Source: Entomortierella parvispora E1425
Lineage: Eukaryota; Fungi; Mortierellomycota
Reading direction: 5' to 3'
DNA: 64,000 nt
NCBI GenBank assembly: GCA_020891255.1
Contig: BQFW01000005.1
Location: 682,001-746,000, forward strand
Part shown: one piece after another, positions 8,624 through 31,406 of the stretch
Position numbering within the stretch: the first letter of the stretch is position 1
How the letters are laid out: every line of letters starts with the position of its first letter
Notes under the pieces: model-generated
What the model saw: only the letters and a program-made list of their open reading frames with translations
Databases searched by the model: none
What the model was told of the DNA's origin: nothing
Position numbers and translations under genes: made by a program

Positions 8624-10120
8624 TGTGAGAATGCACTTTGATGAATGTCAATAGCAAGAAGAAAAGGAGAAATGGAGAATGTGGGGGATGGGGGAGCGGG
8701 GTAATGCAACAGGCGGAGGAAAGGAACGGGAAGGAAGGGACTGAGAGTCTTTTTTTTTTTTTCCTCCTTGTGGAAACAAAGAGTTTTATGAAGAGGATGA
8801 CGGATGATAATCAGGGGGGAGAACGAGACTTTAGGGGGAGGAGACATCCGATGTCTGCTCTGTTTGTTCGCTTTCACCTCTCCTCTCTCTCGCACGCGCG
8901 TCCTCTCCTCCCTCTCTGGGAGACTGGGCGCATGCGCCAGGCGTGTCTAACCTTCTTCCCCAACGCACCCAACCCTTGTCTTGGGTGCACGACCCGATCG
9001 TGATCCCACCTTCCTCCCCTCATCTCCCCTTTCTTCAGCTTTAAAATTTACCCATTTCGCTCCCACACCCACACCTCTGTCGCTATCACTTGCGCTCCTC
9101 CTTGCATTCCACCCACAAAAAAAAGAAAAAGTTGAGAATCTCGTACACCTGTGCAACATTGGGGTGCGGCAAAGATGGAACAGGATGAGTAAGTCAAGAT
9201 GCTTCCACCTGTCCCCCGGTTCTTCCGCTCTTTACTGACTTGACGGTTGCACATTGTGTTATCTTTGGCATTCCACACGCTCACGCGAAACGCCGATTTC
9301 AACTGCACAACCCCTCCCTCCCTCTCCCCCTCCCTTTTCTTTTCAGTCATTCATCTCATTCTCTCCCCTGTAGCTGTTTTAACTCTGGAGGGTGTGCACG
9401 CTGGAACCCTTTTTTTTTGTGGTTTTGGGATCATCTTGAGAGAGTTTTTTTTTTGGGAAAGGCATGTGCGCAGGGTTCAAAATCACATTAAACAAAACGG
9501 GGATTTCCACGCACGTTGCGTTTCGCCACACACTTGCTTGTTTTGCCCTTTCCCCCACTCCACAGAGACAAACGCACACAGACCTCTCTCCAATTGTGTT
9601 TCCCAACTCAAAAAATTAACCTGGAAAGTCGTTTTTTTTTTTTTGTTTTTTTTTTTTTTGTTTTTTTTTTTTTTGACAGCGTCTACCATCGTCTTTCACT
9701 TTAAACCAAGGCAGGGTCGGATAAATGATTTCTCAATAGAGATCAGGACAGAGGCATAGAAAACGAAGCAAAACAGATAACGACTTTTTTTCATTTGGTG
9801 TGTGACTTTAAGAAGCGTGGATGAGCAGAACTCGGGGCTGAGGGGAAGATAGGCCTTCCAGCCGAGACTGAAATGAAAATCCTGTATTCACTTTCTCAAC
9901 TTCTTGTTTGCACCCTCAAAAACTTTCGGCGTACTCTCGTTTTGACGTCTGTTTCCACGCATCGGGTTCAGTGTTTTTGGGGCGTTTTATTTTTTTTGCT
10001 TGGCTACAGAGTTAATCGATTAGGTGCATGCTACAAGGGTTTCAAGAGTAGGGAGGATCAGGGGTACCAGAAAGATGCTATTCAATCTAAACCTGGAGAT
10101 ATCTCTTTGGTCTTTGCTGT

Positions 10121-16046: not shown

Positions 16047-16592
16047 GAGAGTGGATATTTCGGCGGTTTCCATTTGATATCCACCTAGAGCTCCTTCTAG
16101 CGCTTTTGGAGTTTAAGCATCAACACGAGTTGACCACAAACACCAGAACGCAGGAGCGGTCATCACACTTTAGCATCATCACCTAGAAGACAACATCGAG
16201 ATTAAAAAAAAAAAAAAAAATCGACTGGCGACCATGGCATTTAAAGCCTTTAATCCGCAGACCTTGACATCTTCTTCAACTCCCGATTTTTTCGTCCCTT
16301 ATCTACTGTCCGACCCGGTTCTTAATTGCGGATCACGTCCATGCGTCCTTTGATGCACATATCTTGACAGTTTGTCGCTGACGTTGATTGAAAATTGTTC
16401 CATTGGCTGCACCCATGAGTTTTCACACAGTGCAGTTGGACGCCGAGCTTCTTTCTGCCTGGCAGCTGATTCCAAGATGTTGGGGACAGTCTATGGATAA
16501 GCGAACCAAAAAGGAAAGTCCCTTCATGGTCGTCGACTCTCGGTTCCTTTGGGCTCCAAGTCCACGAGGATCAAAAGAAGCAAAAGCAAAAG

Positions 16593-16665
16593 CGCCCAAC
16601 GTGGGGGTCGAACCCACAGCCTTCAGATTAAGAGTCTGACGCTCTACCGATTGAGCTAGCCGGGC
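16593..16665 (-). tRNA. tRNA-Lys(CTT), intronless
   Basis: Minus strand GCCCGGCTAGCTCAATCGGTAGAGCGTCAGACT-CTT-AATCTGAAGGCTGTGGGTTCGACCCCCACGTTGGGCG; stems pair and the T-loop GGTTCGA is present. Confidence 0.96.
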
Positions 16666-16753
16666 AATTCTAAGCTAGCCGGGCCAATTAGATGGCTCGA
16701 TTGGAGATATCAATTAAGTTTCTGTGACCTCCAAGTATCAAAGCTCAATATGA

Positions 16754-16786
16754 TCACGTGACTATTGTTTTGATATAATCACGTGA
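16754..16786. promoter_or_regulatory. Pair of palindromic TCACGTGA (E-box) sites upstream of tRNA-Glu, mirrored at 31215-31245
   Basis: TCACGTGA at 16754, 16779, 31215 and 31238, preserved while the surrounding bases differ. Confidence 0.55.
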
Positions 16787-16846
16787 GATAGGTGAAGAAT
16801 CGTGGTTCCGACACCGGCTCGGAATTCTTCTCTTCATCAAGTTGCT

Positions 16847-16918
16847 TCCTAGTTGGTCCAGTGGTCAGGATTTGTCGCTCTCACCGACAAGGCCCGGGTT
16901 CGATCCCCGGACTGGGAA
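16847..16918 (+). tRNA. tRNA-Glu(CTC), left-arm copy
   Basis: Acceptor TCCTAGT/ACTGGGA; anticodon arm TTGTCG-CT-CTC-AC-CGACAA; T-loop GGTTCGATCC; followed by a T-rich terminator. Confidence 0.95.
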
Positions 16919-17320
16919 TTCTCTTTTGCCTCTTTCTCTTTTTGCTCCTGACCCTGGCCCCTGGCCTGCTGTCTTTGTCGTCCTGTCCTCCGGGCGGATG
17001 TCTCTCAAAGGTCGAGAAAGAGAGCTTTCTTTTTTTTTTTTTGGTCCTTTGGATGTTACAAATGGTCCCAAAGTTGATGGATCAACAGCGGCATCAACTG
17101 AAAACTCAGGGGCAAATATCCTTTTATTGTGAACGCCTGTCTTGGGAGGATAATGTCAAGGATATTGTGATGACTACATATATACAACGCGATCACCGCT
17201 ATATAGATACAACGACACAGGAACGTAGGGTGACGTGAAAACTGGGTAAACTAGAGTACTATTAGAGTAAACTGAGGCCATAGACGACAATGTCAACGAC
17301 CTCAAGGAGCAAACACTCTA

Positions 17321-17575
17321 TCATCGGCTCACCGCATACGCTATCGATGATGTCTGGAAAAGAAACGATGACTTTGCTGCGTTCTGACTGTCAGATATCA
17401 TCGTCCTTGAACTTCCTGCCAAACTGAATTGATCTAGTGAAAGTGATGATCGAGGAGCTGCATTGTTGTGGATTATTGCATCGTGCGACGACAGCCCTGA
17501 ACTACAATGCTCAGATCTGCTCGACCCTCGGTGGCTGTTGGTCATCTTGAGCGACAGAGACGAAAAGATACCCAT
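17321..17575 (-). CDS. Micro-protein family member A (84 aa, ends FQTSSIAYAVSR)
   Basis: Shares the family C-terminal motif. TATATAAG lies ~165 bp upstream, with an A-rich context ACAATG. Confidence 0.65.
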   Translation of the reverse strand: MGIFSSLSLKMTNSHRGSSRSEHCSSGLSSHDAIIHNNAAPRSSLSLDQFSLAGSSRTMISDSQNAAKSSFLFQTSSIAYAVSR

Positions 17576-18382
17576 TGTTATATATGTCGATTGACTTGCT
17601 TGTGTGGATCGAGGACTTGGCTTTGGCAGGGATAAGATCTCGAGAGTGAAGAGGAGACTGCCTTGGTTGCTTCTGTTACTTTTGTTGTGATGTGCTGCTT
17701 GTTTGTATTAGGAGAGAACGATCCACTCCTTTCCTTATATACGAATCCAAACTCATCAATTGTCTCCGGGACCTCTGGGGTGGATTTGTCAGTAAAGTGG
17801 CCCCACCTCAACCTTAATCCTATAGCTCTTTAGCTCCTTGCTTGGATGTCGCCATCCTTGACACTAGAAAAGCATTGCCACCGGCGCCCCATTTCCTCGG
17901 GTGTCATAGTCGGCTCAATTTGTCAGCCCACGACAAAAAAATCCCCCTCCTTCCTTTCTGGGCAAACAATCAGGTCAAGAACAAAAAATAAAAGTAAAGG
18001 AAGGGTGTCATCGATCATTTTTCTAGCCAATAATTACATTGATTGTTTTCCTCCCCTCGCAGCTACAAAAAGCGCAACATGCAAGACACCAACGGTCAGC
18101 GCTGACTCGCTTAATCCATTTAAAGTGCGAGCACACAAAAAATGACACCCTCGTTTTCGGTCCTTGCCGCAATTGCTCGCTCAATAATCATGACTCCTCT
18201 TTGCTTCACTTGTGCTTGAAAATGCAGACACAAGACATGTACGCTGTGCTCTCTCTTCCCCCGAGTTGTTCACTGACTACACAAAAATGTTTATTACTTT
18301 AAAAGTGTTGGCGAAGTTCGTGGGATATGGTACAATGAAAAGAGAAGGTAGCAGGGTAGCGACCAGGTAAAGCGACGGCGCA

Positions 18383-18589
18383 CTACGAGCGTGAAACCAC
18401 GTAGGCCATAGCTGATATCTTGAAATCAGACACAGTCTTGGCCTTGGTTGTTGGCTTCGACTCGGGAGCCGTCAACGTCTCGGCTGAAAGGGAGGATCGT
18501 GGTGTATCGACCAATTCCTCGTACTTGGATGAAGGAGTGTTCTTGCTTGTCTCCTTGGACGGCTTTTTGTTGATGTTGAGGAACGCCAT
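18383..18589 (-). CDS. Micro-protein family member B (68 aa, MAFLNINKK...FKISAMAYVVSRS)
   Basis: Internal ATG at 18589 of track ORF 18383..18904, placed by homology to 29413. TATAAAAA at 18688-18681; family motif present. Confidence 0.75.
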   Translation of the reverse strand: MAFLNINKKPSKETSKNTPSSKYEELVDTPRSSLSAETLTAPESKPTTKAKTVSDFKISAMAYVVSRS

Positions 18590-19355
18590 GGTAGATCTAG
18601 GTGTGAATGCGATTGTGGCTGTAGGAATAACGAGAGTGTATTTGTATTGTCTTGTCTCGGCATTATGAGATGTCGCTGTCTTTTTATACGCCATTTTTAC
18701 TCTGCGCCACCTTCTCCCTCTGATGGTGGGTCTTCCCCGTCTTTGTTGGTTTAGGCGAATATTCATCGAGGAGCAAATACAGCCTTGCGCCACCACCAGG
18801 GACACAGGGGAGTCATTGGGCAAACGAAAAAAAACTCTCATAGGAAGGAAGAGACAATGATACAAGGAAGAGGAGGGGTAGTGCAAGTGCGCTGCGGAAG
18901 CCATCAGATGAGTTTAGGCTGAGTTGACAGACATCGAATACGGGAAGCAAGCACTCCTTTTTTGTCCACCGAAAACAAAGTTGTACTCTTCCTTGGATGA
19001 CACCCCTCTCCTCCAGAGGACACGCCGCGTCCACTATTGGGGCAATGCTTAATTTCTACTGGCTTTTGTAATCCATGCCTATGGATCGACTGTGCAACTC
19101 TCAATTGCTTCCTTTTTACCTTTTCACTCACCGTGACAACCGGGTCAGCCACACCACGAAACCCGGACCAAGGCAATGTAGCCTGAGCTGCGCAAGATCA
19201 GCAAGGGTTTCCTGTTGGACTTCAAAGGTATAAAAGGAACATCACTACCATGTCTCTCTTCTACAATTATCAACAAACCGCATAGCTGAACCAACCAACG
19301 ATCCTACACTCAAACAAACAACGCCTACTTCATCAGGATACCTCACACAATCTCA

Positions 19356-19559
19356 ATGACCTTCCTTCCATCGCTCAAGTCGTCCTCCAAGAATAATAAG
19401 ATCGCGATCGTTTCTACAGAGTCTACCGATACCAAGACTGATTTAAGCAAGAAGAACGAAGACCCATCATCGTCTAGCACAAACGAGGCATCTTCTTCAA
19501 AGAAGAAGGCCGAGCCATTCAAGGTCTCTGCAATGGCCTACGCCATCAGCCGTTCTTAA
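19356..19559 (+). CDS. Micro-protein family member C (67 aa, ends FKVSAMAYAISRS)
   Basis: TATAAAAG at 19229. 48/67 identical residues to 28462..28665 with no indels. Confidence 0.78.
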   Translation: MTFLPSLKSSSKNNKIAIVSTESTDTKTDLSKKNEDPSSSSTNEASSSKKKAEPFKVSAMAYAISRS

Positions 19560-19799
19560 TAAACCTACCCGCCGACTTTCTTCGCATCCTGTAAAGCACT
19601 CAGCAACCATAATAGTATCAAATAAACAAGAAACAGATAGAGAGAAAGATGGAAAGAAGCGAAGAAGAGAAAAAGAAAAAAAAAAACGCGTGGTGAGCGA
19701 TGTTTCACGTGCAGTGACTCGTCCTCTTAATCATCCCATGGGAAAAAACTGGCATTCAATCTTGCATCTCTCATTCCATCCCAGGTCTTCATTTCAGCC

Positions 19800-21596
19800 A
19801 TGTCGACCCTAAGTGTCCTCGAGCGTTTTCTCCTGCTCCCTGAACTAGCCGAGTATCTTTCTGGATACCTCTCCATTAAGGACATTGGTCGACTCTCCGT
19901 TGCAAGCAAACATATTCAATGGTCTATCGCGCCATCCTTTTGGAGGAACTATGTGCTTGACAAACCAGATGATGACGTCCACAGGTTTCCCAGCCCCAGC
20001 CCTGGCCTTTCGCAGAATCTCGAACTTGTACGTTCGATCGAGTTCCGTACTCTTCACACCGGCATCTGGGACATACTCCTGGATCCGCACCTCAAAATAC
20101 AGGCAGGGATAAGGACAGTGGCTGGAGAACTCCCCGTGCCTGCTCCTCTCACTAGTCTCATTTATACCGGATTGCGCCACAACGGTGGAACAAGGCCAGT
20201 TCTCACAGATGAAGAATTTGACAAGTTTTTCTTGCTACTCAAACGAACCCCAACCCTAGAGACGCTCTGCTTGCCAAGCGACCTCTTGGAGGAGATAGAG
20301 AAGTTCATACCCATCCTTGCCCAGATGCCGCATTTAAAGTCGATCACCCTTGTCGAGGGCACTAGAGGACCAATGGAAAACTCGAGGGCCTTTGCCTTCT
20401 TAGGCGCTTGCCTCAGTTTTCAGGATCTGAAAGTCCTTCGCTGCTCCTTCCGCACCTTCAGGGGAGACGACGTTGGGAATGGGGAAGAGCGCCAAATGTT
20501 CGATTGGATCCTCGGTGCCATCAAGATTCATAAGAAGGAGGGCCATTTCCCCTTAGGACTGCATGAGCTCGAGCTCCCCGCTTATCAGGATCGGTACCCA
20601 GAATCGTTCTTGGTTCCTTTTTACACGAGCGGATTTCCTTCCCTGGAGGTATTCCATGTGCCATATATCAGAAGTTCCTACAATGTCCGACTGGAAACTG
20701 CACTGCAGAACCATGTACCCAAGTTACGGGATGTGCAAATGCCAGCCGTGGGACTCCGACACGAAATCCAAGAGGCTAGCACCCTGTTCACCTCCGTGAA
20801 ATGTTGTTCTCGGGGAGAAAATGAGCGGAAGGCTGGGAATGGATGCCGCTCTATCGAGACTATGTTCATGGGCTGGTGCTCTGGCGACACATGGATCTTC
20901 TACTGCCGGAACACACTCGAGTCCTTCATTATGAGCTCCACCCCGGACATCTGGACTCATAATGTTCAGCAAATCCTGTCGATTTGCCCTCGTCTCAAGA
21001 CCATGAAGATCAGTGGCACAGACAACGATGGCTTCTTGTTGGACGTTGAAGACTTTCCGGTATATGACGAGGCGGGTGACGAGAAAGCCGCTAGAGACTT
21101 GGCAACGGATCCAAGGAGACTAATCTATGGAAATGTCACCTTTGGGAACTTTGTTTGCAAAGGAATGAAGACTCTTTCGTTGGTCTCGGGCAGTACATGG
21201 AAGACAGATCCGATGCGTAACCGAGGATTTTATACTCAGCTCGGACAATTGAAGGAACTTGAGGAGCTCACTTATGGATATGAGCTTGCGTACGGGTATA
21301 ACGCAAAGCTCGACAGGGCTCGGCCGGCCTTGCCTGATTTAACCTTAGATTCTCAAGCTGGAGGTCGACTAGACGAATTGAGAGGTCTCAAGAAGCTGCG
21401 AGTGTTGCATATTCAGGGCCGAAGGACACATCATTCTATTGGACAGGCGGAGGTCGAGTGGATGGAACGTGAGTGGCCTCTTCTGGAAAAGGTGATCCTC
21501 AGCCCAAAAGACGAGGACAAGCAGCCCTCTGCCGAATCCGGTCATTGGAAGTGGCTCATGTCAAAGAGACACCGGCTCACAGTTCAGGACCAGTAA
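19800..21596 (+). CDS. F-box-like/LRR protein, 598 aa, intronless, inside the inverted duplication
   Basis: LLLPELAEYLSGYLSIKDIGRLSVASK at the N-terminus. C-terminal LGQLKELEEL...LTLDSQAGGRLDELRGLKKLRVL...EVEWMEREWPLLE. Confidence 0.85.
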   Translation: MSTLSVLERFLLLPELAEYLSGYLSIKDIGRLSVASKHIQWSIAPSFWRNYVLDKPDDDVHRFPSPSPGLSQNLELVRSIEFRTLHTGIWDILLDPHLKIQAGIRTVAGELPVPAPLTSLIYTGLRHNGGTRPVLTDEEFDKFFLLLKRTPTLETLCLPSDLLEEIEKFIPILAQMPHLKSITLVEGTRGPMENSRAFAFLGACLSFQDLKVLRCSFRTFRGDDVGNGEERQMFDWILGAIKIHKKEGHFPLGLHELELPAYQDRYPESFLVPFYTSGFPSLEVFHVPYIRSSYNVRLETALQNHVPKLRDVQMPAVGLRHEIQEASTLFTSVKCCSRGENERKAGNGCRSIETMFMGWCSGDTWIFYCRNTLESFIMSSTPDIWTHNVQQILSICPRLKTMKISGTDNDGFLLDVEDFPVYDEAGDEKAARDLATDPRRLIYGNVTFGNFVCKGMKTLSLVSGSTWKTDPMRNRGFYTQLGQLKELEELTYGYELAYGYNAKLDRARPALPDLTLDSQAGGRLDELRGLKKLRVLHIQGRRTHHSIGQAEVEWMEREWPLLEKVILSPKDEDKQPSAESGHWKWLMSKRHRLTVQDQ

Positions 21597-22195
21597 TCCA
21601 TTGTTGTTGGTACTCGTAGTCTCTGGTATTCGTATAAGCGTATAGCGTACAAGCAATATATCACCAATGTCCTTCGGTCAGAAACCATCCATGTGGCACT
21701 CATATCTCAACAAAACAGGGACAGCAAAGTGGATGATGGCGTTTGCCGAAAGTATTGCAAGACTACTGTCGTGGGCATCAGTCTCTTTGCTAGGAGAGCA
21801 GATGTTCAAATGCTTAGGTCAACTCTCTGATTTGTGGTGTCGCTCTCGCAAGAAAGAATCGTCAACAGATCGGTCCAGAGGTGTCTATCCGGATTGAAAA
21901 TGCGAGTCGATGGACTGTTTCCAAGCCTTTAGAACCCCTCACCTTGTAGTTCAATTTTGTGACTTACGATCGTGCCAATTCTCCTTTTCGTAGCCAGCCC
22001 TTGCCACTGTGTTGAGCCACTGACTAATCCTAAGAGGTAAATATTTCTTTATTAACCAGGAACGACACAAGTGGTCTCAAAACATTGGCATCGAGCCAAG
22101 AAAATTGAATGTGGAAATGAAGCAGAGCAGAGAAAAGCATGAACCTGAAGGCTGGCTATGAAAAAAAGATCACAATTGAGTGGATGGGTGGCATC

Positions 22196-22411
22196 TCAAA
22201 TCGTTTGCCTGATGTCAATGCGGTGGGTGCAGCACCTCCTGCACATGAAGCATCGGCTGCATGTTAATTCTCTGGTACAGCCAACAACAATGCAGATGAT
22301 GACGGGCCCCAGTGAAGTCAAGCAGTTGTCCGAGCCATCCCCTGTGCTAGCACCGCTGTTTTCTGTAGCTGCATCGTAGTCGCCAAAGGAAGCGAGGTTC
22401 TCAAAAGGCAT
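22196..22411 (-). CDS. Small ORF with C-terminal Cys/His cluster (CIVVGCTRELTCSRCFMCRRCCTH); may have an upstream exon
   Basis: 71-aa ORF with an acidic low-complexity N-half, and 7 Cys plus His in 24 residues. Confidence 0.4.
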   Translation of the reverse strand: MPFENLASFGDYDAATENSGASTGDGSDNCLTSLGPVIICIVVGCTRELTCSRCFMCRRCCTHRIDIRQTI

Positions 22412-23118
22412 GTCGAGAGAATCGTTTGGAGTAAGGGGGTGAAGCTGGTCAGTGGAGATGGGGGTGCTTCTGGATAGGACCTTGAGTGGAGAGCTGTGCT
22501 GAGTGCTTCGAAAGGACGGGGAGGTTTGGAGAAAGAGAGTGAAGTGATGGCAGCATCAAGAATCCTTTTTTTTTATGGTTTTCATCATTGCACCTGGAAG
22601 GCACGATGCGGTGTTGCTGCTACATCGACCTGTGGTCTGTCTCGGCATTGGAAGTACAGTGATCAAAGGCATAGAGGAGTGAGAAGGATCGACCATTTCA
22701 TAGTCGTGACCAACATCTACCTTAGGCCATCGATTATCACCGACTGGACCACCGCGGTTCACCCTCGGGGAAGATCGTTGCGACTTGACGATAACTGGCT
22801 TTGGGAGTTCGCCCTTTTGCAAACATAGGCTGGTGTTGGAATCCGAAGTTCATTCAATTCAACATCACGGGACACCAAGCATCAAGGGGTGGGTGGTCCA
22901 TTCTTCCTGCAATCCACTGCCCTTTCCCTCTTTCCTTCAAACAACGCACGTCCTCAACTCAACCAGCCAACCCAACGCTCAAGCAAGAGACCACCTCTAT
23001 CTTCCCAAGCACTTTACCACAACCCTATGTAAGGGACTAACATTATCCACATACAACAGCGCTACTTCTGTGTCTATCAGCCGTTCAAACTCTAACCTCC
23101 TTCCAACGACTCTCTAGG

Positions 23119-23349
23119 ATGCGTTTCCTCTCTTCTTTAATCCTTTTCTCCATCATTGCTTCTGCTATGGGAGCAAAGCCAAGCTGCCCAAAGATATCCG
23201 GAGACAACCAGAGCGTTGGTATCTGCATGGTGCAGCCTGGCGATTGTAATTACTACAACATAGACTGTGGACCCCATGGCGTATGTTGTAGAAAGCCAGG
23301 AGGATGTGGAGATTATTCTTGCTGGAAGGATGGGCATTGGTCAAACTGA
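23119..23349 (+). CDS. Small secreted cysteine-rich peptide (8 Cys), defensin-like spacing
   Basis: Signal-peptide-like MRFLSSLILFSIIASAMG. The mature part has C-x12-C-x6-C-x6-C-x5-CC-x5-C-x4-C with a G-x-C motif. Confidence 0.8.
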   Translation: MRFLSSLILFSIIASAMGAKPSCPKISGDNQSVGICMVQPGDCNYYNIDCGPHGVCCRKPGGCGDYSCWKDGHWSN

Positions 23350-23673
23350 GAAAGCAGCTGTTGAACAACAGCAGTTACCATGCTCGAGAAAAGGAAAGAA
23401 ATAAATATAGCATCTGACAGTCATGGCGCGACATGGCAGAGCCAGTGAATCTGGAGATCAAGTGTGGAGTAGCAATGAAGTGCTGTCACCACTTGCTCGG
23501 TGCTTCTTTCATCCCGGGGAAAGGAGGCGTTTCCAATCTCGGGGCAAAAAGAATTTGTCGCAAACACTGCATTGTGCCACAGTGCATGTGGCTCCACATC
23601 CAGGACCCCACACTTCGCTGTTGATAATGTATTTTTATTGTCCACTGCGCCCACTCTGAATAGCATCCACGCC

Positions 23674-25548
23674 TCACAAAGAAAGGTTGTACCAAGCCCA
23701 ACTTTGCTTCGTCTCTACTTTTTGCTCCTCCCCCCACGGACTTTTGTTTTGCAACTGCTTTTGAGAGCTACTTTTACCGTCATTGATCCTGTCATCCGTG
23801 GGGCTCCTCATCTTGGTCAATCCAGCCACGTTTTCAGCAGCCAGTCTAGCTCGTCTGACTTCCTGAAGCATGTCGAGTGTGACTTGATGAATACAACAGG
23901 AAGCATGGCACCGATTGCAATCCAAGCACATATTGTTTGTACGATCTTGACATCCCTGGCAAGTCAGCGCGTTCATTTCATCCTCCATCAAGTGCTCGTA
24001 ATCAATCGTGATCAGAGCTCTATTGACCACTGTTTTTTTACCGCTTCTCTTGCCGACTCCTTCGCCCCGGTCAACTGCGACCTGACCCTCACTTTCGTCG
24101 CCGTATTGCCCCTTGATCTTGTCTTGCTGGTCTTCGCGGCGTCTCCCTTCTTGATATCTTACTTTCGGTCTCGTTATCTCACTACTGCTTCCCTCTACCT
24201 CACGCAGCTGAAGGTAGTCAAGTTGAGGCACAGGAACACCCTCAAGCCACTCGAGGAGGCGATCAGGCGGTGTAAGGGCAGATTCGGTAAAGCACGCTTC
24301 AATGCCATTGAAAAAAAAACCGTGATATGAACTGGGTGCCTCAATATCTGATAGTGGCGACTGAGGAAGGGAAAATGTGTCATCGCTGACCGGATCATCC
24401 TCCCGAATCAGATCAGCTGCGCCGAGAACACCCTCCTCCTCTTCTTCAAAGTCGCTTCCATGATTGGAATCGGGGCGGAACATGTACCCGGTGTAGGCGC
24501 CGTAACCGCAATACTCATAGTATTCTTTGTGGAGATCGTCCCTTTCTTTGTCACAGTGGATAGGGTCGATACAAGGAGTGGGGTTTACAAGGGGAAGGTC
24601 GACGTTGGGTGTATCCCAAGGCTCAGGTAACGTGCGCTTCGCTCTTCGGATGTAAGATGGATACCTCCAGGATGAAAGGGTCCAAGGGGTCGGAGGGAAA
24701 ATCGCATTGAGATCAGAAGTTTTAGTGAAAAACGGGCCGGTTGGAGAACCAGTAAGCGCTCTCTCTATGGCCCTTGGTTCTCGTATAGCGGAAGTTTCGC
24801 GAGTTGGGGACGAGTTGTTGGACGGAGGATGCTTGTTTACGAAACAAATGATCCTGGGCAACGTGGTCTCGAGTTCGGCCGTGCCGAGGACCCTCTGTGG
24901 TACGCTCTGCTCATCGTTGTAGTAAGGCTCTTTGATATCAACCTCCTCAAGAATCGGTAGTTCATCAACGCGAGCGCTCTCGTCGATTTCTTTCTGCTGT
25001 CCACTGCGGCGGTGGCCACTCTCTAAGGTCGTCTCAGGATCGCAATCGTAACAGTTTGTCGTAATCAAACTGCGCACGTGGATTTCGCTATGTTCAATAC
25101 AAGTCGGCTCGGAGCCATCGACGGCGTGTCTAGATTCGACCACCGCCTTCGAGTCTGGGGTATATGTGATGGAAGTGCGTTTTAGACCTGTTTCTTGTCT
25201 GGTTTCAAGACCATGAGGATAGTAGTGCTTGGAGGGTTCACCACAGGGTAGACGTTCATTCCGCTCAGACGACTCTGCACTCGTGACCTTGGCCTCAATC
25301 AACAATTTATTCGAAGTGCCGTTCTCGACAGCAGGGTGCCCCAGAGGCGCGGTTCCCGCAGGTTGGAAGTCTTCACGATAGTGATTGACGGGTTCTTCAT
25401 TCTGTAAGTTTTGAGAACTCGAGTTGATCGACTCTTGGTGGCCAGAGTCAATCCCGGAATTGTCTGAATTCTCAGTTCCAGAAGGTGTAGCTGGAGAAAC
25501 AAGAACAGAAAGAGTGGGAATTGGGTCACCGTAGCGATGTTTGGTCAT
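23674..25548 (-). CDS. Hypothetical, mostly disordered protein (~624 aa from probable ATG 25548) with a C-terminal Cys/His cluster
   Basis: Open frame 23674..25677 with ATCATG context at 25548. CQGCQDRTNNMCLDCNRCHASCCIH is encoded at ~23887-23961. Confidence 0.7.
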   Translation of the reverse strand: MTKHRYGDPIPTLSVLVSPATPSGTENSDNSGIDSGHQESINSSSQNLQNEEPVNHYREDFQPAGTAPLGHPAVENGTSNKLLIEAKVTSAESSERNERLPCGEPSKHYYPHGLETRQETGLKRTSITYTPDSKAVVESRHAVDGSEPTCIEHSEIHVRSLITTNCYDCDPETTLESGHRRSGQQKEIDESARVDELPILEEVDIKEPYYNDEQSVPQRVLGTAELETTLPRIICFVNKHPPSNNSSPTRETSAIREPRAIERALTGSPTGPFFTKTSDLNAIFPPTPWTLSSWRYPSYIRRAKRTLPEPWDTPNVDLPLVNPTPCIDPIHCDKERDDLHKEYYEYCGYGAYTGYMFRPDSNHGSDFEEEEEGVLGAADLIREDDPVSDDTFSLPQSPLSDIEAPSSYHGFFFNGIEACFTESALTPPDRLLEWLEGVPVPQLDYLQLREVEGSSSEITRPKVRYQEGRRREDQQDKIKGQYGDESEGQVAVDRGEGVGKRSGKKTVVNRALITIDYEHLMEDEMNALTCQGCQDRTNNMCLDCNRCHASCCIHQVTLDMLQEVRRARLAAENVAGLTKMRSPTDDRINDGKSSSQKQLQNKSPWGEEQKVETKQSWAWYNLSL

Positions 25549-26471
25549 GATGATATTGACCTGAGTTAGGGCGGCTATTGATTCGTAGTCTTGGTGGAAG
25601 GTATCTGGGAGAAATAGTTGGCAAGAGGGAGGAAAGCAAAGGATTCTGTGGTAGCTCGTTTTAAGGCGCGTTCGCATGTGCTGTGGTGCAACGAGGAGAG
25701 AGTCGATAATGAAGAGCGACGCGCTTTTAAAATATATCTTGAACGGCTTTTGTACCTTGCTAAATTCCTAATCAGCAACCCGTTTCTCGAGTGCATGCTT
25801 TGTTTGTCTCTTTTTTTTTTGGTCCGACATCGAAGATCCTCATCTGTTTACCGCATACGTCTAAGGACATTTATATTTCAGTAGATGGTTATTCAAGTAG
25901 GGGCGGACTTTCGAAGATAGACCTCATTGTCAAGCCGATCATACTTCATCCTGACATTCTGAAAGATGTTGACGGCAGCGTCAGTTTTCTTTGTAAACCA
26001 TCAACTTTATCAGTCAGAGATGTTCCTCCGGAGACTTCTTGGTTGACCTTTCTTGTAATTGATTTCACAGAGGGGCGATTTACATAATGAGTACCCTATT
26101 GTCGTCTATGAACTTGATTCGAATTGATAAAGGAGATCAGACCGGAGAAAGTTTTGTCAATTGGAGCAAAGGATCAATAAACGAACTTGCAAACGCCACG
26201 TTAATCAAAGAGTGTGGGAAGTGTGGGAGTCCGGGTCTTGTGATATCACTCGGCACAATACCGAACAAGATGAGATGGAAAGATACGGGGGTAACGCGCT
26301 TCATTGTCGGCGAAAGTTCACAAGCCAGCAGCTGGACGCATCCATTTACAGAAAGCCAAAAGCTTCCGCGCTTCCACAATTTTCAGCCGATTTTATTTAT
26401 TTTTTATTTTTTTATTCAAAAGGTCGTTGAAGCAAGAAGGTAAACAGGGGTGAATGTGGGATCAACAGTGC

Positions 26472-26930
26472 CTATTCTTCGGTCATCGACCACGACGATG
26501 AATAAGACATGGAAAAAGAGGTAGTGTCCTCCGAGTCTATATCTTGCTGAGAAAGAGGTCCCAGATCGCGGAGGGTATGAAATTCAACAAAATGGTCGGC
26601 ACTGAATCGTTCGGCGCGATAGTAGTACTGGCACCACAAACAAGTCGTTGGGCAAGCTCTCAAACGGCATCGGGACCCAGCCATACTAGAATTGTCTGAC
26701 TCAACGCCTCCATCGCTTTCACTGTCGCAGTCCCCTTCACAACCGCTGTCGTACGACGATTGAACGTCTTGCGATTCTCGCCATTGATTTCCGTTGATGG
26801 GAGTCGGGACTGGGGAAGTCTTGGGGAGTGTTTCTTTGGGACGAGTCGATTTGGGTCGGCTGTGTTTTGGTAATCGAAGAGGCATGGCTGAATCAATGGC
26901 AGTGGAAGCGAGCTGATGAGTGGGATCCAT
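26472..26930 (-). CDS. Hypothetical 152-aa protein with a CRLRACPTTCLWC motif
   Basis: TATAAAAG at 27021-27014, ~85 bp upstream; Pro/Ser/acidic N-half followed by four clustered Cys. Confidence 0.5.
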   Translation of the reverse strand: MDPTHQLASTAIDSAMPLRLPKHSRPKSTRPKETLPKTSPVPTPINGNQWRESQDVQSSYDSGCEGDCDSESDGGVESDNSSMAGSRCRLRACPTTCLWCQYYYRAERFSADHFVEFHTLRDLGPLSQQDIDSEDTTSFSMSYSSSWSMTEE

Positions 26931-27232
26931 TTTCGATGGGTGAGTGGAGATGACAGTGGGGACATGAAGGTATGATTCGTTGGGTTTGGGGCTCGGCTCG
27001 GACTGTGGGTCAGCTTTTATATCTTCAGATGTGTTGTTGTTTAGTTACAACCATCAGTACTGCTCCAAAAATACGGGAGGATTTTGGAGCTCAAGCTTGA
27101 AGGACGCGCAGCGAAACTCCAGCTAATAGAAAGCGGAGCAATTGGCAGAATGTCACCACTCTTTTCTATCAATACGCATGCCATCATGAGAAAAAAACAA
27201 AGTCGGAGATCTTGGGGGAAAACGTGGGGAAA

Positions 27233-27269
27233 ACCGTAATGTCTCTGCACCGTAATGTCTCTGCACCGT
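27233..27269. repeat. 16-bp tandem duplication
   Basis: ACCGTAATGTCTCTGC twice, plus ACCGT. Confidence 0.9.
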
Positions 27270-27740
27270 GCACGACCATTTACCTTTTAATCTCCATTTC
27301 GCGCTGAAATGACACTGTAGAGTGATATCTTTTGGGGCCTTGGCAATGGAGATGGACGAGGTGATTGTGGAGATGTAGCAGCAGGTTCTTCGACTGCCAC
27401 AAAATACCGCGTGGTTTTTTTTCCCTTTTCGGTGGTGGAAACAACGCTTGGCAGTGTGGACCTTGTAGCTGGGCTACAGACCTATCTCTTTATCGTTTCA
27501 TTCGGTGCAGGAAGGAAATTACGGCTTAAAACCCAACTCTTCGTCAGTCTTGGAAGGTAACCACAGCGCCATCTCGTTCCAGCAAGTAAGCAAAAAAAAA
27601 AAAAAAAATGGCGCCAGCATGGTACACAAAACCAGCGCGTCATTCGATTTCTCCTTCGTTCTCTCCTCTTCTCTCTTGTCACGTTCAAAGTTAACGATTG
27701 CACCACCAGATCAAAAACAGGCCCCGACACTATCACAGCA

Positions 27741-28016
27741 ATGCATTTCCGAGAAGATATCACTGGCATCTCCGACTCCCACCGTGGTCATGCTGGCCGA
27801 CCCGTTTTCTCACCTTCCGTCAACGAGTCAGTTACTCGCCGCGCGAACGAGTGCAGCTATAACGATTGCGCCAAACCTGTGGTCTGCATCCTGGAATACT
27901 GCAAGAAGTGCGATCGGCATTGCCCCCACCCCAACAATGGTGACCGTTGCAGCGTTTACGGGTGTCTTAGTCGCAAGTTGGCTGGTCGCGTCAACTGTAT
28001 TCATCACTGTGTGTAG
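27741..28016 (+). CDS. Small ORF with two tandem C-x4-C-x10-C-x2-[CH] zinc-knuckle-like units; start uncertain
   Basis: CSYNDCAKPVVCILEYCKKCDRHCPH and CSVYGCLSRKLAGRVNCIHHC have identical spacing. Confidence 0.5.
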   Translation: MHFREDITGISDSHRGHAGRPVFSPSVNESVTRRANECSYNDCAKPVVCILEYCKKCDRHCPHPNNGDRCSVYGCLSRKLAGRVNCIHHCV

Positions 28017-28461
28017 ATGAGTCGCGTTACACACGACTTTTGGAGGAGTTTTCCAGCAGCATGAGCAAACAGCCTATCAACAGATTCTGCCTGAGTTTCT
28101 CAAGAATGTCTTCATTTCAAAATAAACCTTCTGAGCTGATGAACTCAGCATCAGATACATTACCTACCCGCACAATCCAATCGACCCTTTCCGATGCATT
28201 CTCATCCGCCATTTTTTTTTTTTACGTCGAAAGAGGCGATCAGCCTTTTCCGCACCTAAAGCGACCACACAATAGAAGTGTGGAGCCAGACAAGGGCCAT
28301 TGGCTTTAAGAGAGAAAAGAAAATGCTAGCTCCCTCCGACCGCGTTGGATTAGGGGTAAGATAGGTTGATACTCGTAAACATGGTTGTTCTGGACAATGA
28401 TGTAAAATATGTTCTTTTGCTGAAGCTATGTCATGCAATTCGTAGTATCGGTCGGCCTCTG

Positions 28462-28665
28462 TTACAAGCGACTGATGGCGTAGGCCATGGCAGAGACCTT
28501 AAACGGCTCGGCCTTCTTCTTGGATGAGGATGCTTCACTTGGGCTAGACGACGAATGAACCCTAGTATTCTTGGCTGACTCGGTCTTTGTGTTGGGAGTC
28601 TTTGCGGAGACAATCGCGACCTTGTTGTTCTTGGAGGATGACTTGAGGGAGGCAAGGAAAGCCAT
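28462..28665 (-). CDS. Micro-protein family member C' (67 aa, ends FKVSAMAYAISRL)
   Basis: TATAAAAG at 28811-28804, ACAATG context; paralogue of 19356..19559. Confidence 0.78.
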   Translation of the reverse strand: MAFLASLKSSSKNNKVAIVSAKTPNTKTESAKNTRVHSSSSPSEASSSKKKAEPFKVSAMAYAISRL

Positions 28666-29412
28666 TGTAATATTGTTCTTTGTGAGAGTGTCTTAATGAT
28701 TTCGAGGTGTTGACAGGCCGCTTGTTTGAATGAAAGATCCTTAGTTGGTTCTTTTGTGCTGCTGATTATGATGGTGGGTCCAATGAAGGTGAAGATAATG
28801 TTGCTTTTATACTTTCATAGCCCCTGCGGGAAGGCCTTGCTGACCATGCGCAGCTCTGACTTGGTTCATGCCTGGTTGTATGGTTGGCCAGTTATCACAG
28901 TGGGTCCATCACTTAGTAGACGCGGCGTGTCCTCTGCTGCTGCTGCTGCTGGAGGCGAGCGTTGTCATTGAGGGGTGTCATCGAGGGGTGTCACCCAAAG
29001 GCGTCATCGGAGTGTAAAGACAAGTAAAGCAAAAGCGGAGAACAGTGCAACTTTGTTTTTGATGAACAAAAAAGGAGTGCTTGCGTGCGAATGTCAATTG
29101 AGCTGGAGCTCGTTTGATGTGCCGCAGCACAATTGACACGATCCCTCTTTGTTTCTTCTTCTTTGTTTGCTGATCTCTCTGTTTCCCCGGGTGAGCGCCA
29201 AATGCTTATTTTTTGAGTCAGATTTGCGCAGGTAGCGTTTGGTCCTCAACTCAAAATCAATATCCACCGCGCACCACCAACCCATTTGTCAGATGGGGGG
29301 ACGACTGAGTCAAGAGGGAGTATAAAAAGACATTGGCAATACCAAAGGACCCAGATGCCACAGACAAAACAATACGAATACAGCCAGGGCCGGAATCACC
29401 GCTGAATCCATC

Positions 29413-29619
29413 ATGTCGTTCCTCAACATCAACAAAAAGCCGTCCAAGGAGACAAGCAAGAACACTCCTTCATCCAAGTACGAGGAATTGGTCGATACAC
29501 CACGATCCTCCCTTTCAGCCGAGACGTTGACGGCTCCCGAGTCCAAGCCAACAACCAAGGCCAAGACTGTGTCTGATTTCAAGATATCAGCTATGGCCTA
29601 CGTGGTTTCACGCTCGTAG
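29413..29619 (+). CDS. Micro-protein family member B' (68 aa, MSFLNINKK...)
   Basis: TATAAAAA at 29321. Protein identical to B except residue 2 (GCG vs TCG). Confidence 0.75.
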   Translation: MSFLNINKKPSKETSKNTPSSKYEELVDTPRSSLSAETLTAPESKPTTKAKTVSDFKISAMAYVVSRS

Positions 29620-30426
29620 TGCGCCGTCGCTTTACCTGGTCGCTACCCTGCTACCTTCTCTTTTCATTGTACCATATCCCACGAACTTCGCCAACACTTT
29701 TAAAGTAATAAACATTTTTGTGTAGTCAGTGAACAACTCGGGGGAAGAGAGAGCACAGCGTACATGTCTTGTGTCTGCATTTTCAAGCACAAGTGAAGCA
29801 AAGAGGAGTCATGATTTTTGAGCGAGCAATTGCGGCAAGGACCGAAAACGAGGGTGTCATTTTTTGTGTGCTCGCACTTTAAATGGATTAAGCGAGTCAG
29901 CGCTGACCGTTGGTGTCTTGCATGTTGCGCTTTTTGTAGCTGCGAGGGGAGGAAAACAATCAATGTAATTATTGGCTAGAAAAATGATCGATGACACCCT
30001 TCCTTTACTTTTATTTTTTGTTCTTGACCTGATTGTTTGCCCAGAAAGGAAGGAGGGGGATTTTTTTGTCGTGGGCTGACAAATTGAGCCGACTATGACA
30101 CCCGAGGAAATGGGGCGCCGGTGGCAATGCTTTTCTAGTGTCAAGGATGGCGACATCCAAGCAAGGAGCTAAAGAGCTATAGGATTAAGGTTGAGGTGGG
30201 GCCACTTTACTGACAAATCCACCCCAGAGGTCCCGGAGACAATTGATGAGTTTGGATTCGTATATAAGGAAAGGAGTGGATCGTTCTCTCCTAATACAAA
30301 CAAGCAGCACATCACAACAAAAGTAACAGAAGCAACCAAGGCAGTCTCCTCTTCACTCTCGAGATCTTATCCCTGCCAAAGCCAAGTCCTCGATCCACAC
30401 AAGCAAGTCAATCGACATATATAACA

Positions 30427-30681
30427 ATGGGTATCTTTTCGTCTCTGTCGCTCAAGATGACCAACAGCCACCGAGGGTCGAGCAGATCTGAGCATTGTAG
30501 TTCAGGGCTGTCGTCGCACGATGCAATAATCCACAACAATGCAGCTCCTCGATCATCACTTTCACTAGATCAATTCAGTTTGGCAGGAAGTTCAAGGACG
30601 ATGATATCTGACAGTCAGAACGCAGCAAAGTCATCGTTTCTTTTCCAGACATCATCGATAGCGTATGCGGTGAGCCGATGA
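30427..30681 (+). CDS. Micro-protein family member A' (84 aa, same translation as A)
   Basis: TATATAAG at 30261; double stop TGA TAG; family motif present. Confidence 0.65.
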   Translation: MGIFSSLSLKMTNSHRGSSRSEHCSSGLSSHDAIIHNNAAPRSSLSLDQFSLAGSSRTMISDSQNAAKSSFLFQTSSIAYAVSR

Positions 30682-31082
30682 TAGAGTGTTTGCTCCTTGA
30701 GGTCGTTGACATTGTCGTCTATGGCCTCAGTTTACTCTAATAGTACTCTAGTTTACCCAGTTTTCACGTCACCCTACGTTCCTGTGTCGTTGTATCTATA
30801 TAGCGGTGATCGCGTTGTATATATGTAGTCATCACAATATCCTTGACATTATCCTCCCAAGACAGGCGTTCACAATAAAAGGATATTTGCCCCTGAGTTT
30901 TCAGTTGATGCCGCTGTTGATCCATCAACTTTGGGACCATTTGTAACATCCAAAGGACCAAAAAAAAAAAAGAAAGCTCTCTTTCTCGACCTTTGAGAGA
31001 CATCCGCCCGGAGGACAGGACGACAAAGACAGCAGGCCAGGGGCCAGGGTCAGGAGCAAAAAGAGAAAGAGGCAAAAGAGAA

Positions 31083-31154
31083 TTCCCAGTCCGGGGATCG
31101 AACCCGGGCCTTGTCGGTGAGAGCGACAAATCCTGACCACTGGACCAACTAGGA
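31083..31154 (-). tRNA. tRNA-Glu(CTC), right-arm copy
   Basis: Exact reverse complement of 16847-16918. Confidence 0.95.
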
Positions 31155-31406
31155 AGCAACTTGATGAAGAGAAGAACTCCAAGCCGGAGTCGGAACCATG
31201 AGTCATCACATGCCTCACGTGATGCTATCAAAAGCAATCACGTGATCATATTGACCTGTATACCCTTAAGAGCCCGAGGAACTGCCACTTTATTGGAACT
31301 TACTGGGAGGAGGATATGGTTGCCAAAGTGTCAAAGACATCCTCCCATGCCTCAGTTAACCTTGAATCCCCCCCTTTTATCCTTTGTCCTTGTAGACAAC
31401 TTCTCT

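What the first reader, a model, noticed from the sequence alone, without database searches (positions are those of the whole stretch)
17321..30681. Six-member micro-protein family sharing a C-terminal F-[KQ]-x-S-[AS]-[MI]-A-Y-[AV]-[IV]-S-R motif
Seen: three types, each present twice. Their C-termini are A/A' FQTSSIAYAVSR, B/B' FKISAMAYVVSRS, C FKVSAMAYAISRS and C' FKVSAMAYAISRL. All are 67-84 aa with a short hydrophobic/basic N-terminus (MAFL, MSFL, MTFL, MGIF), a Ser/Lys/Thr-rich variable middle, and no signal peptide or Cys-rich core. Each has its own TATA box ~90-165 bp upstream. C vs C' is 48/67 identical: residues 44-66 are invariant, while 21-37 are mostly different. The motif survives between A, B and C although the rest has diverged beyond recognition, which argues for selection on the protein. 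I do not recognise the family. Inferred options: (i) disordered proteins with a C-terminal binding motif or degron, possibly tied to the F-box gene they flank; (ii) precursors with a conserved core or follower peptide; (iii) an amyloid or membrane-active tail.
Basis: partly seen in the sequence, partly recalled or inferred. Interest (0 to 1): 0.9.

Follow-up and report, generated by a model that had tools for sequence, protein, structure and literature searches.

The report
Conserved tail-motif micro-protein family in Mortierellaceae
Six small genes in this soil fungus (Entomortierella parvispora) belong to a real, selectively maintained family of 60-90-residue proteins that ends in a near-invariant 13-residue tail, occurs in at least five Mortierellaceae genera, matches no known family, and has unknown function.

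Summary
All six ORFs exist at the stated coordinates, and the tail motif occurs nowhere else in the 64 kb. They are three paralogues (A, B, C), each doubled by a 2.8-kb inverted duplication.

They are real coding genes:
- dN/dS is 0.11-0.25 over whole genes and 0.03-0.06 over the tail, where dS is about 1.
- Differences fall mostly at third codon positions.
- A second strain has no indels in the one ORF examined there (A), while its flanks have many.
- Each gene has its own TATA box, and most copies have an A at -3 and an AATAAA.

Relatives turned up in Entomortierella, Gryganskiella, Mortierella, Podila and Haplosporangium. All are "hypothetical" or unannotated, and four of the six copies here are unannotated. 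The three subtypes also cluster in M. alpina, next to different neighbours, so the proposed link to the F-box-like gene is not supported.

Pfam, PDB sequences and the ESM Atlas gave nothing. AlphaFold2 gave low confidence throughout, with one short helix in the tail.

My best reading is co-regulated, disordered, basic, Ser/Thr-rich proteins that dock through conserved terminal motifs. This is inferred, not shown. No RNA or peptide evidence could be reached.

The parts
17321..17575 (-). Gene A (84 aa, type A; tail FQTSSIAYAVSR-stop)
   Evidence: ORF. Orthologues in L002, L004 and strain X3. dN/dS 0.23 against L002. X3 shows no indel in this ORF, against 25 gaps elsewhere in the 877 nt of its contig that were laid.
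30427..30681 (+). Gene A' (identical copy of A in the right arm)
   Evidence: Lies in the homogenised outer arm.
18383..18589 (-). Gene B (68 aa, type B; tail FKISAMAYVVSRS). NCBI annotates it with an upstream extension to 103 aa.
   Evidence: P0005. The conserved start codon is shared with B' and the orthologues.
29413..29619 (+). Gene B' (68 aa). With B, one of only two copies annotated in this genome, and the only one with these boundaries.
   Evidence: P0001 is identical to it and is on record for BQFW01000005.1. dN/dS 0.14 against L002.
19356..19559 (+). Gene C (67 aa, type C; tail FKVSAMAYAISRS), unannotated
   Evidence: Orthologues in L002 and Gryganskiella (P0007). dN/dS 0.11.
28462..28665 (-). 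Gene C' (67 aa; tail ends SRL), unannotated diverged copy of C
   Evidence: codons 44-66 show 9 synonymous and 0 non-synonymous differences from C. dN/dS for C against C' is 0.14.
16735..19560 (.). Left arm of the inverted duplication. It carries tRNA-Glu(CTC), A, B and C.
   Evidence: Double depth of the outer arm in runs X1 and X3.
28460..31263 (.). Right arm of the inverted duplication (C', B', A', tRNA-Glu)
   Evidence: L004 shows the same order, B-A-tRNA-Glu-phosphatase gene, in a relative.
19229..19235 (+). TATA box of C (TATAAAA, -127). The other five: A 17735-17741(-), A' 30261-30267(+), B 18682-18688(-), B' 29321-29327(+), C' 28805-28811(-).
   Evidence: A TATA element at a similar distance is kept in the L002, L004 and Gryganskiella orthologues.
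29852..30218 (.). B'-A' spacer with conserved blocks and repeated TGACA-core motifs (GGGTGTCA x3, CTGACAAAT x2). Mirror copy at 17784-18150.
   Evidence: Three-species alignment. CTGACAAAT: 6 found against 0.77 expected, 5 of them in the cluster. GGGTGTCA: 11 found against 2.2 expected, 9 of them in the cluster.
28963..29084 (.). Conserved block in the divergent C'-B' promoter region (GGGTGTCA repeats plus a 45-nt element). Left-arm counterpart at 18947-19005.
   Evidence: (I4).

Best explanation
A, B and C (each doubled by the inverted duplication) are independent, intronless, TATA-driven genes. They encode a Mortierellaceae-restricted family of small (about 60-93 aa), basic, Ser/Thr/Lys-rich proteins that are probably intrinsically disordered.

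Each protein carries conserved short motifs embedded in a faster-evolving linker:
- An N-terminal M-[ASTG]-[IFL]-[LF] cap. It is probably exposed and N-acetylated after loss of Met, and forms a short amphipathic turn.
- In types A and B, a [ST]-P-R-S-S-hydrophobic-S-x-[DE] block that looks like a phosphorylation cluster. In type C, S-S-K-N-K-V-A-[IV]-[IV]-S instead.
- An almost invariant C-terminal tail, [FY]-[KQ]-x-S-[AS]-[MI]-A-[YL]-[AV]-x-S-R plus 0-1 residue, then stop.

The most likely mode of action is that the tail folds into a short helix or strand when it docks onto a conserved partner, with the linker and N-terminus tuning or localising that interaction. In other words, a small disordered regulator or adaptor working through short linear motifs. 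The three subtypes are expressed together from promoters that share TGACA-core elements.

Shown: the genes exist, they are under purifying selection as proteins, they are conserved and clustered across genera, and they resemble no known family.

Inferred: disorder, docking by the tail, phospho-regulation and co-regulation. The partner and the biological role are unknown.
For: Coding and selected:
- dN/dS (Nei-Gojobori) is 0.23 for A, 0.14 for B, 0.11 for C and 0.14 for C against C'.
- Over the last 14 codons it is 0.03-0.06, with dS of about 1 or saturated.
- C against C', codons 44-66: 9 synonymous and 0 non-synonymous changes.
- Third-position excess in all 9 pairs, p = 0.045 to 0.00016.
- Between species, only the ORFs, the tRNA and a few promoter blocks still align by blastn.
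- Strain X3 has 0 gaps in the A ORF, against 25 gaps elsewhere in the 877 nt of its contig that were laid.

Gene-like layout: a TATA box at -92 to -166, A at -3 in four of the six copies, and AATAAA 62-193 nt after the stop in five of six.

Family range: an HMM search of 1.84 billion representatives and two word-index searches returned only Mortierellaceae or unnamed environmental proteins, apart from one bacterial chance hit. The genera are Gryganskiella, Mortierella (alpina, antarctica, polycephala and two unnamed species), Podila (three species) and Haplosporangium.

Subtypes co-cluster. The order C-B-A-tRNA-Glu is seen in L002, C-B in Gryganskiella, and five members lie within 3.3 kb in M. 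alpina.

Disorder and no membrane segment:
- AlphaFold2 with 18 sequences gave mean pLDDT 58 and only one helix, residues 60-66.
- S+T is 23-41% and net charge is +2 to +9.
- The highest 19-residue Kyte-Doolittle mean is below 1.0.

Shared cis elements are enriched in the cluster.
Against: - No transcript, ribosome or peptide evidence was reachable.
- A low-confidence AlphaFold2 model is only weak evidence for disorder.
- No partner is known, and no conserved neighbour suggests one.
- As a helix, the tail has large hydrophobic residues on both faces and only a modest hydrophobic moment. Self-association or strand addition is therefore equally possible.
- Type A looks less constrained at short range. 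E1425 against strain X3 shows 6 synonymous and 8 non-synonymous codon changes, including A79V inside the tail, and E1425 has lost the final Ser to a stop.
- The family tree is poorly resolved, so the three-subtype scheme rests mainly on motif signatures.
Confidence: 0.5

Rival explanations
1. The tail is a self-assembling or membrane-active element. That would mean an amyloid-like signalling motif or an in-plane membrane or lipid-droplet anchor, with the proteins acting by oligomerising or coating a surface rather than by docking onto one partner.
For: Alternating small residues (S-A-M-A-Y-A-I-S) suit a strand packed on both faces. Large hydrophobic residues lie on both faces of a putative helix. 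The N-terminal M-x-I/F-L/F cap gives a short amphipathic turn, with a helical moment up to 0.6. Two type-A orthologues begin M-G-I-F-x-S, a form that could be myristoylated.
Against: - No adjacent NLR or other protein carries a matching motif. Neighbours differ between genera.
- No Gly/Asn/Gln pattern of the known fungal amyloid motifs.
- Mean hydrophobicity of the tail is low, and no 19-residue window comes near membrane values.
- The M-G start is not conserved. L004 has M-S and all other types have M-A, M-S or M-T.
Confidence: 0.13
2. The tail is a C-terminal stability or phospho-dependent recognition signal. Candidates are a C-degron read by a cullin-RING ligase, or a 14-3-3 'mode III' site (phospho-Ser followed by one or two residues and the C-terminus). 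The proteins would then be short-lived, signal-controlled regulators.
For: The invariant Ser-Arg is followed by zero or one residue and then the stop in nearly all members (SR, SRS, SRA, SRV, SRL). This matches the spacing rule of 14-3-3 mode III as I recall it from the literature. TATA-containing promoters fit inducible genes. The genome has many F-box-like genes.
Against: - Twelve to thirteen residues are conserved, far more than a C-degron or a mode III site needs.
- There is no basic residue upstream of the Ser, as most mode III kinase sites have.
- The distance of the motif from the free carboxylate varies (SR against SRS).
- The neighbouring 598-aa gene has no detectable F-box and is not a conserved neighbour.
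Confidence: 0.12
3. They are precursors of processed peptides (RiPP-like: conserved leader and follower around a variable core, or a conserved core at the C-terminus).
For: Both ends are conserved and the middle is more variable. The genes are small, multi-copy and clustered. Y-A-I-S and Y-V-V-S in the tail are superficially like the Y-A-I-G and Y-V-I-G cores of ustiloxins (recalled from the literature, not tested).
Against: - No signal peptide, Kex2 sites or flanking prolines.
- The middle is 35-60 residues of low-complexity sequence and is itself under purifying selection between orthologues (omega 0.06-0.28).
- No tailoring enzyme (prolyl oligopeptidase, DUF3328, methyltransferase) is a conserved neighbour.
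Confidence: 0.06
4. They are not genes: chance ORFs, transposon fragments, or exons or antisense of larger genes.
For: Four of the six copies are unannotated in this genome. Some gene models in other species extend beyond the tail (P0020, P0025, P0026).
Against: - dN/dS is far below 1 and differences show third-position periodicity.
- The ORFs are conserved across five genera while intergenic DNA is not.
- No transposon domain in any ORF of the arms.
- The long gene models are fusions of a type-C ORF with the antisense strand of the convergent type-A gene, so they are annotation artefacts.
Confidence: 0.03

Closest known systems
Small heat-stable disordered regulators acting through short linear motifs (ENSA/ARPP-19/Igo1, PKI, PP1 inhibitor-2/Glc8 type)
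   Same: Size of 60-120 aa, hydrophilic and probably disordered. One or two short, strongly conserved motifs sit in an otherwise fast-evolving chain, with Ser-rich likely phosphorylation sites.
   Different: No sequence similarity and no Pfam hit to any of these families. The key motif is at the extreme C-terminus. The family has three old paralogue types kept in one cluster and is restricted to Mortierellaceae. No target is known.
MSDIN-type cycloamanide/amatoxin precursor genes of Amanita (RiPP precursors)
   Same: A small multi-copy gene family with conserved N- and C-terminal segments around a more variable middle.
   Different: The middle is 35-60 residues, low in complexity and under purifying selection. 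There are no flanking prolines and no processing enzyme nearby.
Fungal amyloid signalling motifs (HET-s/HRAM, PP, sigma) at the C-terminus of small effector proteins
   Same: A short conserved motif at the very end of a small protein. The genes are clustered.
   Different: No partner NLR with a matching N-terminal motif next door. The composition is unlike the known motifs. The known systems are described from Dikarya and bacteria (from memory).
Deposited 'hypothetical proteins' of Mortierellaceae (e.g. KAG0042646.1 / BGZ83_000233 and BGZ83_000232 of Gryganskiella cystojenkinii; BGZ70_009128 of Mortierella alpina)
   Same: True homologues with the same N-terminal cap and C-terminal tail.
   Different: None has a name, domain or publication. 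Several models are wrong: two tandem genes merged in P0008, antisense fusions in P0020, P0025 and P0026, and N-terminal extensions in P0002, P0005 and P0014.

Membership tests
Any curated protein family (Pfam-A) or solved structure | Significant profile match | tested here: not met
   No Pfam family for the window members at E <= 1. Only two isolated sub-threshold hits among 18 members. No PDB chain at E <= 10 with the family profile. Atlas best scores of 0.73 and 0.55 are at chance level.
RiPP precursor (MSDIN-like or dikaritin-like) | Hypervariable short core flanked by conserved recognition sequences or processing sites | tested here: not met
   The middle is 35-60 aa with omega 0.06-0.28 between orthologues. 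No KR sites or flanking Pro pattern in the alignment.
RiPP precursor (MSDIN-like or dikaritin-like) | Co-located tailoring or processing enzyme conserved across species | tested here: not met
   Neighbours are an LRR-like protein, Cys/His ORFs and a dual-specificity phosphatase here. In M. alpina they are SPRY/CTLH and DNA_pol_A_exo1. In Mortierella sp. AM989 they are a RapGAP and a RING protein.
Fungal amyloid signalling pair (effector C-terminal motif plus NLR N-terminal motif) | Adjacent NLR-type gene whose N-terminus carries the same motif | tested here: not met
   The motif pattern was found only at the ends of the small ORFs in the window and in loci L001, L002 and L004-L007. No NLR gene adjoins the cluster.
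14-3-3 mode III C-terminal ligand | Ser/Thr followed by one or two residues and the free C-terminus | tested here: met
   S-R-stop or S-R-x-stop in nearly all members, where the model does not run on or stop short.
14-3-3 mode III C-terminal ligand | Phosphorylation of that Ser and binding to 14-3-3 | not testable with these tools
   Needs phosphoproteomics or binding assays. There is no upstream basic residue, which argues against it.
Secreted or membrane micro-protein | Signal peptide or transmembrane segment | tested here: not met
   The highest 19-residue Kyte-Doolittle mean is 0.94, all members have negative GRAVY, and there is no hydrophobic core after the start.
Intrinsically disordered protein with short linear motifs | No stable predicted fold; conserved islands in a low-complexity, fast-evolving chain | tested here: met
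   AlphaFold2 mean pLDDT 58, pTM 0.12, one 7-residue helix. Invariant columns are confined to the tail and Met1. Prediction only; there is no biophysics.

The most novel reading that the evidence does not exclude
The 13-residue tail is a portable C-terminal address or docking signal for machinery specific to Mortierellaceae and not yet described. Examples would be a new peptide-processing or modification route, or a lineage-specific receptor. The three co-regulated subtypes would be its dedicated substrates or adaptors, making this a new pathway rather than just an orphan family.
Probability: 0.1. Interest if true: 0.7.

Novelty: new variant of a known kind. Interest (0 to 1): 0.4.

Why it matters
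Mortierellaceae are among the commonest soil fungi. They are industrial producers of arachidonic acid and hosts of bacterial endosymbionts, yet their lineage-specific genes are almost unstudied.

This work defines a micro-protein family that is largely missed or mis-modelled by annotation. Four of six copies are missing here, and several models elsewhere are fused or extended.

The family is conserved across genera, with a tail under very strong purifying selection and a conserved three-subtype cluster. That gives a clean starting point for experiments: a short peptide bait, a small cluster to delete in the transformable M. alpina, and diagnostic tryptic peptides.

It also gives annotators a simple signature for recovering the genes. 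If the function proves ordinary, the main value is better annotation.

Tried and rejected
- **RNA evidence.** No RNA run was listed for the locus. The second search returned only DNA runs. Expression is therefore untested.
- **Exact-sequence look-ups.** A and C are not on record.
- **First word-index search.** With C alone it found nothing, not even C itself.
- **Family and structure searches.** Pfam, PDB sequences and the Atlas gave no lead.
- **Literature.** No paper contains any of five tail peptides.
- **Transposon or larger-gene origin.** Rejected: no domains in the arm ORFs, and the long gene models elsewhere are antisense fusions.
- **Myristoylation of type A.** Rejected as a family feature, because the M-G start is not conserved.
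- **PTS1 peroxisomal signal.** Considered because C' ends SRL, and rejected because the other members end SRS, SRA, SRV or SR.
- **DNA-level conservation of the tail.** Considered because GCCATGGC, which encodes A-M-A, is a palindrome. Rejected because synonymous sites in the tail are near saturation.
- **Phylogeny of 33 members.** Too poorly resolved to prove three clean clades.

Full report
**1. Source**

The window lies on BQFW01000005.1 of assembly GCA_020891255.1. That accession series belongs to Entomortierella parvispora E1425 (PMC8759367). The window is eukaryotic, with SPT6, RanBP1 and several F-box-like genes.

**2.

- The six ORFs are at the stated coordinates with the quoted N- and C-termini.
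- A pattern for the tail matches only these six sites in all six frames of the 64 kb, each directly before a stop codon.
- C and C' are 48/67 identical. Codons 44-66 carry 9 synonymous and no non-synonymous differences. Codons 21-43 carry 15 non-synonymous and 3 synonymous ones.

The six are three paralogues times two:
- They sit on an inverted duplication, 16735-19560 / 28460-31263. Its outer 1.86 kb is 98.8% identical up to the start codon of B, and its inner part has diverged.
- Each arm also holds a tRNA-Glu(CTC).
- In the source run, the 1.7-kb outer-arm contig has twice the depth of the 10.9-kb contig that spans the interior. A second, roughly 91%-identical strain (X3) shows the same two-to-one pattern. 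The duplication is therefore real and shared.

**3. They are protein-coding genes under selection**

A profile search of 1.84 billion representative proteins found B' itself plus homologues in a Logan assembly and in Gryganskiella cystojenkinii. Fetching those contigs gave three comparison loci:
- L002: a syntenic arm, C-B-A-tRNA-Glu, from a relative about 80% identical within the genes.
- L001: the Gryganskiella C-B pair, in synteny with the window's interior.
- L004: a soil-metagenome contig carrying B-A-tRNA-Glu followed by the phosphatase gene that flanks the window's right arm.

Between these loci, blastn aligns only the small ORFs, the tRNA and a few promoter blocks.

The coding evidence:
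- Nei-Gojobori dN/dS is 0.23 (A), 0.14 (B), 0.11 (C) and 0.14 (C against C').
- Over the last 14 codons it is 0.03-0.06, with dS about 1 or saturated, even against Gryganskiella.
- Differences concentrate at third codon positions in all nine pairs.
- In strain X3 the A ORF has 20 substitutions and no gap, while the rest of the 877 nt of that contig that were laid has 25 gaps.
- The 15 changed codons I could place in X3's A ORF are 6 synonymous, 8 non-synonymous and one stop-to-Ser.

Each gene has a TATA box at -92 to -166. A at -3 is present in four of the six copies and an AATAAA 62-193 nt after the stop in five. The orthologues keep a TATA element at a similar distance. No ORF in the arms has a transposon domain.

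**4. Range and architecture of the family**

Two further searches with family alignments found members in:
- Mortierella alpina (many), M. antarctica, M. polycephala and two unnamed Mortierella species
- Podila humilis, P. clonocystis and P. verticillata
- Haplosporangium
- Gryganskiella
- JGI and Logan environmental assemblies

All named sources are Mortierellaceae, and all members are "hypothetical" or unnamed.

Shared features:
- An N-terminal M-[ASTG]-[IFL]-[LF] cap.
- A Ser/Thr/Lys-rich linker.
- The tail [FY]-[KQ]-x-S-[AS]-[MI]-A-[YL]-[AV]-x-S-R plus 0-1 residue.

Three signatures recur:
- **Type A:** [YF]-[KQ]-T-S tail, plus an S/T-P-R-S-S-x-S-x-D/E block.
- **Type B:** D-F-K tail, E-Y-K-E-L and the same P-R-S-S-L-S block.
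- **Type C:** S-S-K-N-K-V-A-I/V-I/V-S near the start, with an E/P-F-K-V tail.

A maximum-likelihood tree gives moderate support for a type-C group (80/74) and a type-A group (86/93), but is otherwise unresolved.

In M. alpina, five members of all three signatures lie within 3.3 kb. Their neighbours are unrelated to those in E. parvispora. The small genes stay together while their surroundings change.

**5. Annotation problems**

- In E1425 only B' (68 aa) and B (extended to 103 aa) are annotated. A, A', C and C' are not.
- P0008 merges two tandem genes into one model.
- P0020, P0025 and P0026 join a type-C ORF to the open antisense frame of the convergent type-A gene.

**6. What the proteins look like**

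- There is no match in Pfam, PDB sequences or the ESM Atlas.
- AlphaFold2 with 18 sequences gives mean pLDDT 58, pTM 0.12 and a single helix at residues 60-66 of B'.
- S+T is 23-41% and net charge is +2 to +9.
- GRAVY is negative, and no 19-residue window comes near membrane hydrophobicity.

**7. Regulation**

The B-A and C-B spacers keep conserved blocks across species.

| Motif | Found in window | Expected | Within the cluster |
|---|---|---|---|
| CTGACAAAT | 6 | 0.77 | 5 |
| GGGTGTCA | 11 | 2.2 | 9 |

Duplication of the arms inflates these counts about twofold. Even so, the motifs recur in independent spacers and in the other species. I infer a shared factor that recognises a TGACA core.

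**8. Interpretation**

The evidence establishes a real, selected, lineage-restricted micro-protein family. It does not establish function.

The best-supported mechanism is a small disordered regulator or adaptor. Its tail would dock onto a conserved partner, and its linker, which carries likely phosphorylation sites, would modulate that contact. I put this at about 0.5.

The rivals are:
- a self-assembling or membrane-binding tail
- a degron or 14-3-3 mode III-type C-terminal signal
- a peptide precursor
- non-genes

The proposed link to the neighbouring "F-box" gene is not supported. Pfam sees no F-box in that gene, and it shows only weak LRR-like similarity to a true F-box-like gene in the window. 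It is also not a conserved neighbour.

**9. Limits**

- No RNA or peptide evidence was reachable.
- The searched protein collections rarely call such small eukaryotic genes, so absence from Linnemannia, Lobosporangium or other phyla is not shown.
- The disorder claim rests on prediction only.

Noticed in passing
window 17321-17323 and 30679-30681: In E1425 both A copies end ...VSR-TGA. Strain X3 reads TCA (Ser) there, and L002 and L004 also end SRS. The final Ser was therefore lost to a derived nonsense change, now present in both arms, presumably spread by gene conversion.
   Followed up: yes
window 18590 / 29412: The boundary between the homogenised (98.8%) and diverged parts of the inverted duplication falls exactly at the start codon of B/B'. 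The two B copies therefore share a coding region but have diverged promoters.
   Followed up: partly
L005:7484-7699 and 9061-9276 (M. alpina); P0020, P0025, P0026: The antisense frame of type-A genes is open end to end. In three species it has been joined to the upstream type-C ORF in deposited gene models. The A-M-A codons (GCCATGGC) and the M-A-I start (ATGGCCAT) are palindromes, so the antisense strand reads similar residues.
   Followed up: partly
window 17784-18150, 18998-19005, 28973-28993, 29284-29292, 29852-30218: TGACA-core motifs (GGGTGTCA, CTGACAAAT) are several-fold enriched and almost confined to the cluster's spacers. They are a candidate binding site for a common transcription factor.
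   Followed up: partly
window 16846-16919 (+), 31082-31155 (-), 16592-16665 (-): A tRNA-Glu(CTC) sits at the outer end of each arm, and a tRNA-Lys(CTT) lies just outside the left arm. The tRNA-Glu keeps this position next to gene A in L002 and L004. Its very high contig depth shows many genomic copies.
   Followed up: partly
It has only weak LRR hits, plus weak C-terminal similarity (E = 0.02) to a true F-box-like gene at 49924-51756.
   Followed up: partly
window 18420-18668 (+) and 29310-29582 (-): ORFs of 82 and 90 aa run antisense to B/B'. They have no family hit and no independent support, and are probably by-products of the codon bias of B.
   Followed up: no
same genome, another piece (note s1-199024): The scan's notes list another cluster of five TATA-driven micro-proteins with a different motif in this genome. 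Clustered micro-protein families may be a recurring feature of E. parvispora.
   Followed up: no
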